A DNA stretch of 64,000 bases from Mobula hypostoma (lineage: Eukaryota), in the NCBI RefSeq assembly GCF_963921235.1, contig NC_086124.1, forward strand, positions 1,612,001 to 1,676,000, read 5' to 3'. The position numbers and the translations under genes were made by a program. The number at the start of each line of letters is the position of its first letter. Positions within the stretch are counted from its first letter, which is position 1. Under the pieces are notes generated by a model, which ran no database searches, was not told the DNA's origin, and saw only the letters and a program-made list of their open reading frames with translations. Shown here in pieces: positions 46,697 to 63,283 of this stretch.

Positions 46697-46731
46697 ATGG
46701 ATGCCCTCTGCCGTCTCATCAGTTACAGTCA
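46697..46731 (+). CDS. Novel gene, putative first coding exon
   Basis: agtATGg Kozak context, MDALCRLISYS(Q)|gtgagt; acceptor cctttacccctctacccag ending at 46684. Confidence 0.55.
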
Positions 46732-61700: not shown

Positions 61701-63283
61701 TTAAGGGCACGGAGATATGCAGGACATAGAACAGTACGGGTCCCTCGGCCAGCCATGTTGTGCCGACCCCTTAACCTACTCTAAGATCAAACTAATCCCA
61801 CATAGTCCTCCATTTTCTTTCATCCACTTGCCTATCTGAGAGTCTCTCAAATTTCCCTAATGTACCTGCCGTTACCACCACCCCAGCTGGGTGTTCCATG
61901 TACCCACCCTACGCTGTGTAAAAAACCTGTTTCTGACATTCCCCCACCCCCCATACATTCCTCGAATCACCTTAACATCATACCCTCTCATATTAGCCAT
62001 TTCCACCCTGGGAAAACATCCCTGACTGTCCGCTCGATCTTGTACACCTCCATCAAGTCGCCCCTCAGCTTCCTGTACTCCAAAGAGAAAAGCCCTCACT
62101 CAGTGTATCGTCGTAAAGCACGATCTCTAATCCAGACAGCATCCCGGTAAATCATCCTCTGTAAAGCTTCCACATCCTTCCTATAATGAGGCAATCAGAA
62201 CTAAACATGATACTCCAGATGTGGTCTAACCAGGGTTTTATAGAGCTGCAACATTACCGCACGACTCTTGAACTCAATCCCCTGACTAATGAAGGCCAAT
62301 CTTAACGAAGCTATCAACTTGTGTGGCGGCTTGAAGAGATCTATGGTCATGGTGGGTGACGGGGTGGAGATACGTCTCTACCAAAGGAGGTGTAAGATGC
62401 TCCTTCCCTCTACTAGCCTGCAGGTCACCCTTGGGCAAGGTGTAGCACCTGCTAAGCACCTCTCCCCACCTCCCCGATCAGGGTCGCGTGAAGCCATGGG
62501 GGATGGTCATATGAGCAGCTTGTGCACATCACAAGTCCTGGTTATGCAACCACCAACACCAAGTAGACAATCTCTGAAGAGTATTGAGAATGGCTGGGGT
62601 CACCCACCTTGTAAAGACACTGCCCAGAAGGCAGCAATGACAAACCACTTCTATAGAAAAGTTTGCCAAGAACAATCATGGTTACGGAAAGATCACGATC
62701 ACCCACGTCATCTGACACGGCACACAATGATGATGTCATATGACATGGTATGTAATGATGATGTCATAGACACAGAACACAACAATGATGTCATACAACA
62801 CAGCACGTAATGATGACAATAAACAACATCCTTGAGCCCCACCCTCCTGCTGATGGTTAAGTCGCTAGCTAACATTGTTTCAAGGTTCTCTTGTGTGGAT
62901 TGTTCTAGCACTAAACTGAGATTTTTTTTCCAATGACAGCTACTTGTACTTGAAGCTCATTTATTGATTGCTTCTTCATTCCCTTTGACAGCATCTTTTC
63001 ATGGAATCGTGCGCTTCCTGAGCCCCAGAGTGGATGTGTATGGATCAGGCAGAATTCCCTTATTCTTCCCTATGAGTGGGAGGACGACTGTGAGATGATC
63101 GACTGGGTGATTGACCAGTACCTTCAGGAGAATGACAGCATTTCCGCCTACTACAAGGGCAAGATTATTCTGACCTTGAAGGATGCTTTGGGAATCACGT
63201 CGACAGCCGCAGATTCAGAAAACCTGCCAAAAAGACTCCAGAGTCATGGGTTTGAAGCAAGCATCCCGGTTATCCCAGAGATG
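46697..63283 (+). CDS. Uncharacterised multi-exon protein-coding gene (at least 287 aa, 3' part presumably beyond the window); last exon possibly an SLC4A11/Band-3-like cytoplasmic domain
   Basis: Exons 46697-46731, 47857-48007, 51467-51564, 57657-57736, 59182-59386 and 62992-63283 are non-repeat islands with pyrimidine-rich acceptors and donors. Junction phases 2,0,2,1,2 all match and there is no stop over 861 nt. Confidence 0.75.
47292..47842 (-). mobile_element. Internally deleted Tc1-like element (same family as 28815-29378, opposite orientation)
   Basis: cattcagtggccactttatta ... taataaagcatccattgagtg TIRs. Confidence 0.78.
47857..48007 (+). CDS. Novel gene exon with GC donor
   Basis: ttcctctctacag|FLESMFEVSMCPESVELNRENEGLPKDCETPSVRTKLRRSAEQNRKYTRE|gcaagt. 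Confidence 0.65.
48325..49782 (-). mobile_element. CR1 with RT remnant and an internal inverted duplication
   Basis: [27 protein letters not shown]; 48712-48877 is an inverted copy of 49203-49391. Confidence 0.85.
50105..50553 (-). mobile_element. CR1 3' fragment
   Basis: Highly similar to 27438-28048. Confidence 0.92.
50561..50740 (-). mobile_element. L1 ORF2 C-terminal fragment
   Basis: VIAFVALLARRAVLLGWKDASAPTLIQWF. Confidence 0.7.
50777..50918 (+). mobile_element. 142-bp Penelope pLTR-derived insertion with inverted 5' piece and hammerhead-like motif
   Basis: 13-bp TSD CTATTCCTTCATG (50764-50776 and 50919-50931); agtcCTGACAAagggtctcgtcccGAAAcgtcaact. Confidence 0.78.
51228..51352 (-). 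mobile_element. HE1/V-SINE fragment
   Basis: V-domain core and tRNA head. Confidence 0.72.
51467..51564 (+). CDS. Novel gene exon
   Basis: ttctaac branch point, long pyrimidine tract, cag|KCMECNGCKGNYQRLKKTYQASWEQTPAIKSC|gtatct. Confidence 0.72.
51715..51982 (-). mobile_element. HE1/V-SINE
   Basis: Full head, core and tail; homologous to 9458-9720. Confidence 0.82.
53641..54218. repeat. Irregular 48-70-bp tandem repeat (gagttgtgcaaYacctcaggttatggacaggaggc...)
   Basis: About ten recurrences of the core; the ~120-bp block encoding MDRRL..DTRVVEHLV.SIGS occurs twice. Confidence 0.85.
54750..55830 (-). mobile_element. Hero-like (R2-group, RLE-encoding) non-LTR retrotransposon C-terminal fragment
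   Basis: LHTWGLREDPNCKLCGQQGSLLHILSQC (CCHC knuckle), GRYRWCHD (RHD-like), LDIILW...IIQVELTVPRE...RKALKY (decayed PD-(D/E)xK nuclease); abuts a CR1 fragment at 54520-54750. Confidence 0.82.
56135..56548 (-). mobile_element. RTE-type LINE-derived element
   Basis: RTE-like 5' region (GATTGTCACCTTGTCGCGGTGGAGAAGCTTG...CCATGGCGGTAAGGTC) joined to an RTE-like 3' end. Confidence 0.6.
57074..57500. mobile_element. Non-autonomous TIR-type repeat
   Basis: cacactgtgcaaaag...cttttgcacagtgtg inverted ends; family shared with 10095-11870. Confidence 0.65.
57657..57736 (+). CDS. Novel gene exon
   Basis: ttttaccag|(S)EERLTEKRCTLISGRKHTKKTADYDD|gtaagt. Confidence 0.72.
57912..58172 (-). mobile_element. 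CR1 3' end
   Basis: Similar to the tail of 15924-16200. Confidence 0.75.
59182..59386 (+). CDS. Novel gene exon
   Basis: cactaac branch point, ttttcacag|DSDLQTENGQCKPHQVRCYRCGRRKTKQDGECCGERSGRRNRASKERSDEYYFESRISDGSSKNLQEK|gtcagt. Confidence 0.75.
60635..60915 (-). mobile_element. HE1/V-SINE
   Basis: V-domain core and tRNA head. Confidence 0.75.
61725..62335 (-). mobile_element. CR1 3' fragment
   Basis: RNRFFTQRRVGTWN remnant and CR1 tail. Confidence 0.72.
62350..62815 (+). mobile_element. SINE-like element with RTE tail and tandemly repeated end
   Basis: Homologous to 15350-15770; repeated atgatgtcataNNacacagcac units. Confidence 0.7.
62992..63283 (+). CDS. Novel gene exon (globular-looking domain)
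   Basis: ttccctttgacag|(S)IFSWNRALPEPQSGCVWIRQNSLILPYEWEDDCEMIDWVIDQYLQENDSISAYYKGKIILTLKDALGITSTAADSENLPKRLQSHGFEASIPVIPEM|gtctgt, 292 nt open. Confidence 0.8.

What the first reader, a model, noticed from the sequence alone, without database searches (positions are those of the whole stretch)
46697..63283. Hidden plus-strand gene: six phase-matched exons give a 287-aa open frame not seen in the ORF track
Seen: six unique-sequence islands among repeats, with pyrimidine tracts, branch points (ttctaac at 51432, cactaac at 59156) and donors. Junction phases 2,0,2,1,2 all agree and there is no stop in 861 nt. The N-terminal ~190 aa are charged and Cys-rich (CMECNGC, CYRC, ECCG) and probably disordered; the last exon looks globular. 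Established: in human the neighbour beyond TMEM234 is DCDC2B on the opposite strand, and I see no doublecortin-domain exons here. Inference: this is a lineage-restricted or highly diverged gene in an otherwise conserved block.
Basis: partly seen in the sequence, partly recalled or inferred. Interest (0 to 1): 0.8.

Follow-up and report, generated by a model that had tools for sequence, protein, structure and literature searches.

The report
Conserved uncharacterized cartilaginous-fish gene after TMEM234
The hidden plus-strand gene is real: five of its six proposed exons match, boundary for boundary, an unnamed predicted gene found so far only in sharks and a chimaera, just downstream of TMEM234; its function is unknown.

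Summary
All junctions are AG/GT except the exon 2 donor, which is GC. The phases are 2,0,2,1,2 and 861 nt are open.

Exons 2-6 (47857-48007, 51467-51564, 57657-57736, 59182-59386, 62992-63283) are orthologous to predicted "uncharacterized protein" genes:
- Callorhinchus milii LOC103185676
- Scyliorhinus canicula and S. torazame
- Chiloscyllium plagiosum and C. punctatum, the latter annotated as TMEM234 isoforms X1-X3

Amino-acid identity is 50-70%. Intron positions and phases are identical, and dN/dS is 0.17-0.26. Gene order is the same in C. milii and C. punctatum: EIF3I(-), TMEM234(+), this gene(+), DCX-domain gene(+).

Two corrections to the model:
- Exon 1 (46697-46731) is no better than chance. 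The conserved start is the ATG at 47870 in exon 2.
- Orthologues have two more exons, so the gene runs past 64000.

Pfam, PDB and an exhaustive 1.84-billion-protein search found no relative outside Chondrichthyes. AlphaFold2 gave no usable fold.

The protein has a basic N-terminal half with eight invariant Cys/His, then an acidic, highly conserved 97-aa module. I guess a soluble, probably nuclear, zinc-binding protein.

This is a new member of an already predicted but unstudied family. Interest is moderate to low.

The parts
47857..48007 (+). Exon 2. The conserved start codon is ATG at 47870-47872. The donor is GC (GAG|GCAAGT).
   Evidence: tblastn to P0001 gives E 2e-11 and to P0009 E 3e-10. 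The acceptor lies 13 nt upstream of the ATG in the window, C. milii and C. punctatum. Sequence read.
51467..51564 (+). Exon 3. It encodes KCMECNGCKG..., including the invariant CxxC.
   Evidence: tblastn to P0009 gives E 6e-10. Boundaries and phase are the same in L001 and L002. blastn to the shark exon shows 79% identity.
57657..57736 (+). Exon 4, a basic linker (EERLTEKR...KKT).
   Evidence: tblastn E is 0.007-0.03 taken alone, but the match is colinear. The donor G|GTAAGTC is identical in the window and C. milii and differs by one base in C. punctatum (G|GTAGGTC). blastn to the shark exon shows 75% identity over 101 nt.
59182..59386 (+). Exon 5. It carries the invariant C-x2-H-x3-C-x2-C-x10-CC cluster and the DE.YF.SR motif.
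   Evidence: tblastn E is 6e-26. dN/dS is 0.14-0.21. Invariant Cys/His listed.
62992..63283 (+). Exon 6, the acidic 97-aa module and the most conserved part (LPYEWEDDCEMIDWVIDQY...YKGKII..L.DALGIT). The donor ATG|GTCTGT sits at the position conserved in orthologues.
   Evidence: phmmer E is 5e-40 to C. milii and 2.5e-39 to S. canicula. 51 of 97 columns are invariant. dN/dS is 0.15-0.23.
46697..46731 (+). It is an unsupported candidate 5' exon.
   Evidence: It is open and in phase. However, 18 equal or better candidates exist by chance, and it is not conserved in L001 or L002.
46876..46925 (.). A 50-nt conserved non-coding block about 1 kb upstream of exon 2. It could be a regulatory element or part of a 5' exon.
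   Evidence: blastn shows 82% identity to L002 8643-8691, colinear and on the same strand. It was not found in C. milii.
32750..32826 (+). Last coding exon of TMEM234, with stop TGA at 32824-32826. In C. milii the neighbouring gene's model starts 52 nt after the equivalent stop.
   Evidence: tblastx and blastn to L001 9845-9949. Sequence read.
18675..18842 (+). TMEM234 exon encoding aa 5-55, ending in phase 0. In C. punctatum isoform X1 the equivalent exon is joined in frame to exon 3 of this gene.
   Evidence: tblastn of P0010 aa 5-58 gives 78% identity, E 4e-21. The P0010 sequence carries Pfam PF10639.

Best explanation
Window 47857-63283 (+) holds exons 2-6 of a real, intact protein-coding gene. 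It is the orthologue, in this ray or skate genome, of the predicted and unstudied cartilaginous-fish gene known as Callorhinchus milii LOC103185676 (also Scyliorhinus canicula LOC119964798 and Chiloscyllium plagiosum LOC122563402). It sits directly downstream of TMEM234 on the same strand and upstream of a doublecortin-domain gene.

Shown:
- orthology;
- identical intron positions and phases;
- synteny;
- purifying selection;
- a conserved start codon at 47870, preceded by a conserved acceptor, so at least one unidentified 5' exon lies upstream;
- two further coding exons in orthologues, so the gene runs beyond 64000.

Inferred from sequence features only:
- The product, about 350 aa in orthologues, is soluble, with no hydrophobic segment or signal peptide.
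- Its N-terminal half is basic (pI 9.0), rich in Lys and Arg, and has eight invariant Cys/His: CxxC, then C-x2-H-x3-C-x2-C-x10-CC. That is enough for two zinc sites.
- An acidic (pI 4.3), very conserved 97-aa module follows, and then a poorly conserved acidic Ser/Pro-rich tail.

My committed guess, at about 0.25, is a nuclear zinc-binding protein. Its basic half would contact nucleic acid or chromatin and its acidic module would bind a partner protein.

Transcription may be partly coupled to TMEM234, by read-through or shared exons, as two annotation models in other species suggest.
For: Orthologues: exon 6 hits C. milii XP_007902505.1 (E 5e-40, 70% identity) and S. canicula XP_038650730.1 (names). 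The full-length search adds the C. punctatum and C. plagiosum proteins.

Exon structure: all of exons 2-6 match, colinear. Splice junctions fall at the same codon positions in the window, L001 and L002.

Selection: NG86 dN/dS is 0.18 (window vs C. milii), 0.26 (window vs C. punctatum) and 0.17 (C. milii vs C. punctatum). All five exons are below 0.5 and dS is near saturation.

Synteny.

Start: the ATG and the acceptor 13 nt upstream are conserved.

Protein features: invariant Cys/His, charge asymmetry and lack of a hydrophobic segment.

Unique conservation: the only colinear unique DNA shared with the shark is exons 3-6 plus one 50-nt block.

TMEM234 link: C. punctatum RefSeq proteins named TMEM234 isoform X1-X3 contain these exons, and X1 joins TMEM234 aa 1-55 to exon 3. 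The C. milii model's first coding bases, ATGAG|GTGAGG, lie 52 nt after the TMEM234 stop. There is no CpG island at 45-48.5 kb, whereas one lies at 12.5-13.5 kb.
Against: No transcript data could be consulted, and the orthologue models are computational predictions.

Function is not supported by any homology. There is no Pfam family, no PDB relative and no atlas neighbour.

AlphaFold2 confidence is too low to give a fold: pLDDT 34 for the full length and 47 for the module alone. The two models even disagree on the secondary structure of the module.

The Cys/His spacing fits no standard zinc-finger pattern.

The protein collection holds no ray or skate member, so the window could not be compared with close relatives.

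The gene's 5' and 3' ends are not in hand.
Confidence: 0.93

Rival explanations
1. The exons are not an independent gene. They are alternative downstream exons of the TMEM234 transcription unit (a conjoined or read-through gene). The products would start at the EIF3I/TMEM234 CpG-island promoter. Some would be TMEM234 N-terminus fusion proteins anchored in a membrane.
For: - C. punctatum RefSeq calls these proteins TMEM234 isoforms X1-X3, and X1 joins TMEM234 aa 1-55 in frame to exon 3.
- In the window the matching TMEM234 exon (18675-18842) ends in phase 0 and exon 3 starts in phase 0, so the same fusion would be in frame.
- In C. milii the model begins 52 nt after the TMEM234 stop.
- There is no CpG island near exons 1-2.
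- Exon 2 has a conserved acceptor, so it needs an upstream exon.
Against: - C. milii, S. canicula, S. torazame and C. plagiosum annotations treat it as a separate gene.
- Exon 2 carries its own conserved ATG with A at -3.
- The fusion skips exon 2, which is under purifying selection in its own right.
- The window's 3'UTR candidate donor at 32890 is weak, and joined to exon 2 it would read ATG TGA.
- All of the linking evidence comes from prediction pipelines. No reads were seen.
Confidence: 0.3
2. It is a very diverged orthologue of a named bony-vertebrate gene from the same block, for example IQCC. From my memory of the human map, IQCC lies next to DCDC2B.
For: The gene lies next to a DCX-domain gene, where an inversion of a DCDC2B-IQCC pair would place IQCC. 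This is an inference plus my recollection of the human gene order, not a tool result.
Against: No non-chondrichthyan protein matches exon 6 at a meaningful E-value in an exhaustive search. None matches the full-length profile either. No IQ motif or any other Pfam family is found.
Confidence: 0.07
3. It is a chance open frame assembled by eye from splice-like sites, or a decaying pseudogene.
For: Exon 1 alone behaves like chance. The donors of exons 3 and 6 are weak.
Against: Over 271 codons there are no stops or frameshifts and dN/dS is about 0.2.
Confidence: 0.01

Closest known systems
Callorhinchus milii LOC103185676 (XP_007902505.1) and its shark orthologues (S. canicula XP_038650730.1, S. 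torazame XP_072356455.1, C. plagiosum XP_043573075.1, C. punctatum XP_072404017.1 and GCC18166.1)
   Same: Amino-acid identity is 50-70% per exon. Intron positions and phases are the same, as are the invariant Cys/His set and the acidic 97-aa module. The gene sits in the same place downstream of TMEM234.
   Different: The window copy has a GC donor after exon 2. It lacks one Cys that the others share (NRA instead of NRC in exon 5). Its 5' exon and exons 7-8 are not in the window. All of these proteins are predictions with no name or known function.
Conjoined or read-through gene pairs (adjacent same-strand genes that share transcripts)
   Same: The gene lies immediately downstream of TMEM234 on the same strand. 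Annotation in C. punctatum merges the two, and the C. milii model starts inside the TMEM234 3' region.
   Different: No transcript evidence was seen here. The downstream part has its own conserved start codon and is annotated as a separate gene in four other species.
Saposin B-type domain (Pfam SapB_1)
   Same: A 22-residue stretch (DCEMIDWVIDQYLQENDSISAY) is 50% identical to the first helix of the units of a snail saposin-repeat protein. The module-only AlphaFold2 model puts a helix there.
   Different: The saposin Cys framework is absent: the module has one invariant Cys. There is no signal peptide and no Pfam SapB hit even at E 10. The E of 6e-13 comes from seven near-identical repeats.

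Membership tests
Cartilaginous-fish LOC103185676 family (uncharacterized predicted proteins) | Significant sequence similarity over the whole coding region | tested here: met
   Exons 2-6 all match P0001, P0009 and P0010. Exon 6 gives E 5e-40.
Cartilaginous-fish LOC103185676 family (uncharacterized predicted proteins) | Same exon-intron structure (intron positions and phases) | tested here: met
   Junction contexts in the window, L001 and L002 coincide at every one of the exon 2-6 boundaries.
Cartilaginous-fish LOC103185676 family (uncharacterized predicted proteins) | Position between TMEM234 and a DCX-domain gene, on the same strand as TMEM234 | tested here: inconclusive
   The upstream side is met: EIF3I(-) and TMEM234(+) exons lie in the window. 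The downstream DCX-domain gene would lie beyond 64000 and cannot be seen.
Cartilaginous-fish LOC103185676 family (uncharacterized predicted proteins) | Open frame kept under purifying selection | tested here: met
   271 codons have no stop, and dN/dS is 0.18-0.26 against two orthologues.
   Exon 6 has no Pfam family at E up to 10. A profile of the module against all PDB chains finds no SLC4 or Band 3 chain at E up to 10. All orthologues are proteins of 239-372 aa without a membrane domain.
Doublecortin-domain proteins (DCDC2B) | DCX domain (Pfam PF03607) | tested here: not met
   There is no Pfam hit for any exon or orthologue. In C. milii and C. punctatum the DCX-domain gene is a separate gene downstream.
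Saposin-like proteins | Six-Cys framework, secretory signal and a SapB_1/SapB_2 profile match | tested here: not met
   The module has one invariant Cys, there is no Pfam hit, and only 22 columns align.
Roadblock/LC7 domain (RagC C-terminal domain) | Significant profile match or a confident alpha-beta roadblock fold | tested here: inconclusive
   The best PDB hit is the RagC C-terminal domain, but at E 0.77. The AlphaFold2 models have low confidence and disagree with each other.
CCHC zinc knuckle | C-x2-C-x4-H-x4-C spacing and a Pfam zf-CCHC match | tested here: not met
   The spacing here is C-x2-H-x3-C-x2-C-x10-CC. There is no Pfam hit. The PDB match to AIR2 has E 1.6.

The most novel reading that the evidence does not exclude
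This is an orphan gene that arose, or survives, only in cartilaginous fishes. It has been kept under purifying selection in all three species compared (a chimaera, a shark and the window's genome). It encodes a zinc-binding protein with a fold not yet in any database, and it is expressed through transcripts shared with its upstream neighbour TMEM234, including a membrane-anchored TMEM234 fusion isoform.
Probability: 0.2. Interest if true: 0.5.

Novelty: new member of a known kind. Interest (0 to 1): 0.33.

Why it matters
It adds a ray or skate orthologue to a small family of predicted proteins that nobody has studied. It also fixes the gene model: the true start, a GC-AG intron and missing terminal exons.

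The gene is conserved in sequence, structure and position across the three species compared (a chimaera, a shark and the window's genome), yet has no detectable relative in other vertebrates. That makes it a candidate lineage-specific gene for people studying cartilaginous-fish biology or gene birth and loss in the conserved EIF3I-TMEM234-DCDC2B block.

The possible transcript sharing with TMEM234 matters for annotation, because one RefSeq annotation currently labels these proteins as TMEM234 isoforms.

It does not open a long-standing question. No function can yet be assigned.

Tried and rejected
- **Pfam.** Scans of each exon and of three full-length orthologues found nothing at E up to 10.
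- **ESM Atlas.** Exon 6 scored at most 0.80, against bacterial hypothetical proteins. P0001 gave no usable hit.
- **PDB profile searches.** Only sub-threshold matches came back: huwentoxin and AIR2 at E 1.6, RagC at E 0.77.
- **AlphaFold2.** The full-length model has pLDDT 34 and the module-only model 47. The secondary structures conflict. I ran no fold search on these models because matches to low-confidence models mean nothing.
- **Snail saposin hit.** It is inflated by repeats, covers only 22 columns and lacks the Cys framework. Rejected.
No support.
- **An in-frame start in the TMEM234 3'UTR.** ATGTG|GT at 32885 looked like the C. milii ATGAG|GT. Joined to exon 2, which starts with A, it reads ATG TGA. 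Rejected as a start and kept only as a weak donor lead.
- **Exon 1 conservation.** None found.
- **Literature.** A search for the locus names found nothing. Papers naming both TMEM234 and DCDC2B were unrelated livestock association and cancer copy-number studies.
- **Earlier notes.** A word search found nothing on these genes.
- **Unannotated copies in bony-vertebrate or lamprey genomes.** I could not look for these, because the genome collections offered are bacterial and archaeal.
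Full report
**The observation**

The six segments sit at the stated coordinates. Their lengths are 35, 151, 98, 80, 205 and 292 nt, which gives junction phases 2,0,2,1,2. The joined 861 nt translate into 287 aa without a stop, containing CMECNGC, CYRC and ECCG. Exons 2-6 have AG acceptors behind pyrimidine tracts. The donors are GT except for exon 2, which has the usual GC-donor form GAG|GCAAGT. 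The two branch-point-like heptamers are at 51432 and 59156, 35 and 26 nt upstream of their acceptors. The repeat families found in 44-64 kb lie between the exons, not on them. After exon 6 the frame would stop three codons later (TAA at 63290-63292) unless the weak donor ATG|GTCTGT is used.

**Is it a gene?**

An exhaustive phmmer search with the exon 6 peptide, against 1.84 billion representative proteins, returned two strong hits. One is a 372-aa protein at E 5e-40 and 70% identity. The other is a 244-aa protein at E 2.5e-39. They are Callorhinchus milii "uncharacterized protein LOC103185676" and Scyliorhinus canicula "uncharacterized protein LOC119964798". A 344-aa S. torazame protein belongs to the second cluster.

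A full-length search added a Chiloscyllium cluster:
- C. plagiosum LOC122563402;
- C. punctatum GCC18166.1;
- three C. punctatum RefSeq proteins named TMEM234 isoform X1, X2 and X3.

The E-values are 2e-11, 6e-10, 7e-3, 6e-26 and 8e-43. Nothing hits exon 1.

I fetched the C. milii locus (L001) and a C. punctatum locus (L002) and mapped their proteins. Every junction of exons 2-6 falls at the same codon position and phase in all three genomes.

Codon alignments give NG86 dN/dS values of 0.18 (window vs C. milii), 0.26 (window vs C. punctatum) and 0.17 (C. milii vs C. punctatum). Every exon is below 0.5 and dS is near saturation, so the true ratios are if anything lower.

At the DNA level, the only colinear unique matches between window 32.8-64 kb and the shark locus are exons 3-6 and one 50-nt block. 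Everything else is dispersed repeats.

This is a real gene under purifying selection in all three species compared: a chimaera, a shark and the window's genome.

**Corrections to the model**

- **Start and exon 1.** Orthologues align from a Met that corresponds to the ATG at 47870-47872 in exon 2 (MFEV.. against MTE..). The acceptor 13 nt upstream of that ATG is conserved in all three genomes. An upstream 5' exon therefore exists, but the coding sequence most likely starts in exon 2.
It is not conserved. It is one of 18 phase-compatible ATG..GT candidates with an equal or better donor in the 15 kb before exon 2. It is unsupported.
- **Downstream end.** Orthologues have an intron at the codon matching 63283/63284, followed by two more coding exons. 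That intron is 1.3 kb in C. milii and 3.4 kb in C. punctatum. Only 717 nt of the window remain, and nothing there matches.

**Context**

- EIF3I exons lie on the minus strand at about 1.4-12.1 kb.
- A CpG island lies at 12.5-13.5 kb.
- TMEM234 exons lie on the plus strand at about 18675-18842, 26076-26159, 31093-31203 and 32750-32826, with the stop at 32824-32826.
- C. milii and C. punctatum have the order EIF3I(-), TMEM234(+), this gene(+), DCX-domain gene(+).

**Link to TMEM234**

Two annotation facts tie this gene to TMEM234.
- In C. punctatum, RefSeq merges the two genes. Isoform X1 joins TMEM234 aa 1-55 in frame to exon 3. The same join would be in frame in the window.
- In C. milii, the model's first coding bases, ATGAG|GTGAGG, lie 52 nt after the TMEM234 stop.

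The window has no CpG island near 45-48.5 kb. A look-alike ATGTG|GTCAGC lies 58 nt after the window's TMEM234 stop and aligns with the C. milii site. Its donor is weak, though, and joined to exon 2 it reads ATG TGA. I keep it only as a lead. Whether transcripts are really shared cannot be decided without reads.

**What the protein looks like**

Numbering is from the ATG at 47870. The window encodes 271 aa up to the end of exon 6.
- **N-terminal 175 aa.** They are hydrophilic and basic (pI 9.0, 38 Lys+Arg). They contain eight invariant Cys/His: C48 and C51, then C116, H119, C123, C126, C137 and C138.
- **The 97 aa of exon 6.** They are acidic (pI 4.3), and 51 of 97 columns are invariant across six sequences.
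- **The tail in orthologues.** It is acidic, rich in Ser and Pro, and poorly conserved.
- **No hydrophobic segment or signal peptide.** The highest 19-residue Kyte-Doolittle mean is 0.68.

**Search for a known family**

- No Pfam family matches.
- PDB profile searches give only sub-threshold hits.
- The ESM Atlas gives nothing usable.
- AlphaFold2 gives pLDDT 34 for the full length. For the module alone it gives 47.
- A snail saposin-repeat protein scored E 6e-13. The match is 22 columns repeated seven times, and the saposin Cys framework is missing.
- No paper mentions these loci.

**Mechanism**

My committed guess, at roughly one in four, is a soluble, probably nuclear, zinc-binding protein. 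Its basic half would contact nucleic acid or chromatin, and its acidic conserved module would bind a partner. This rests only on composition and on the invariant Cys/His, not on any homology.

**Verdict**

The gene is, however, already present as an unnamed prediction in five other cartilaginous-fish annotations. This is a new member of a known but unstudied family, with a corrected model. No ray or skate member was in the protein collection searched. No relative outside cartilaginous fishes was detected, but unannotated copies in other vertebrate genomes could not be looked for with these tools.

Noticed in passing
window 1394-12100 (-), 12500-13500, 18675-32826 (+): EIF3I exons lie on the minus strand and TMEM234 exons on the plus strand, head to head around a CpG island (GC 0.64, CpG observed/expected 0.85 at 13000-13499). 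This matches the C. milii arrangement.
   Followed up: partly
window 48007/48008: The intron after exon 2 has a GC donor (GAG|GCAAGT) in this genome. The chimaera and the shark have GT at the same junction.
   Followed up: yes
window 46876-46925; L002 8643-8691: A 50-nt AT-rich block about 1 kb upstream of exon 2 is 82% identical between this genome and the bamboo shark, colinear with the exons. It was not found in C. milii. It could be a regulatory element or part of the missing 5' exon.
   Followed up: partly
window 53672-54200: Inside intron 3 there is an array of eight diverged copies (65-91% identity) of a 68-nt unit spaced 49-118 nt apart, with higher-order repeats of 168 and 293 nt.
   Followed up: no
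window 49482-49769 (-), 44496-44960 (-), 50188-50535 (-): The introns and the upstream region hold open frames that look like reverse-transcriptase or LINE fragments. Related copies occur in several places in the window and in the shark locus.
   Followed up: no
L001 21208-29387; C. punctatum locus: In C. milii and C. punctatum the DCX-domain gene downstream of this gene is on the same strand as TMEM234. That would imply an inversion in one lineage.
   Followed up: no
window 22434-23018: A run of 585 N lies inside a TMEM234 intron.
   Followed up: no
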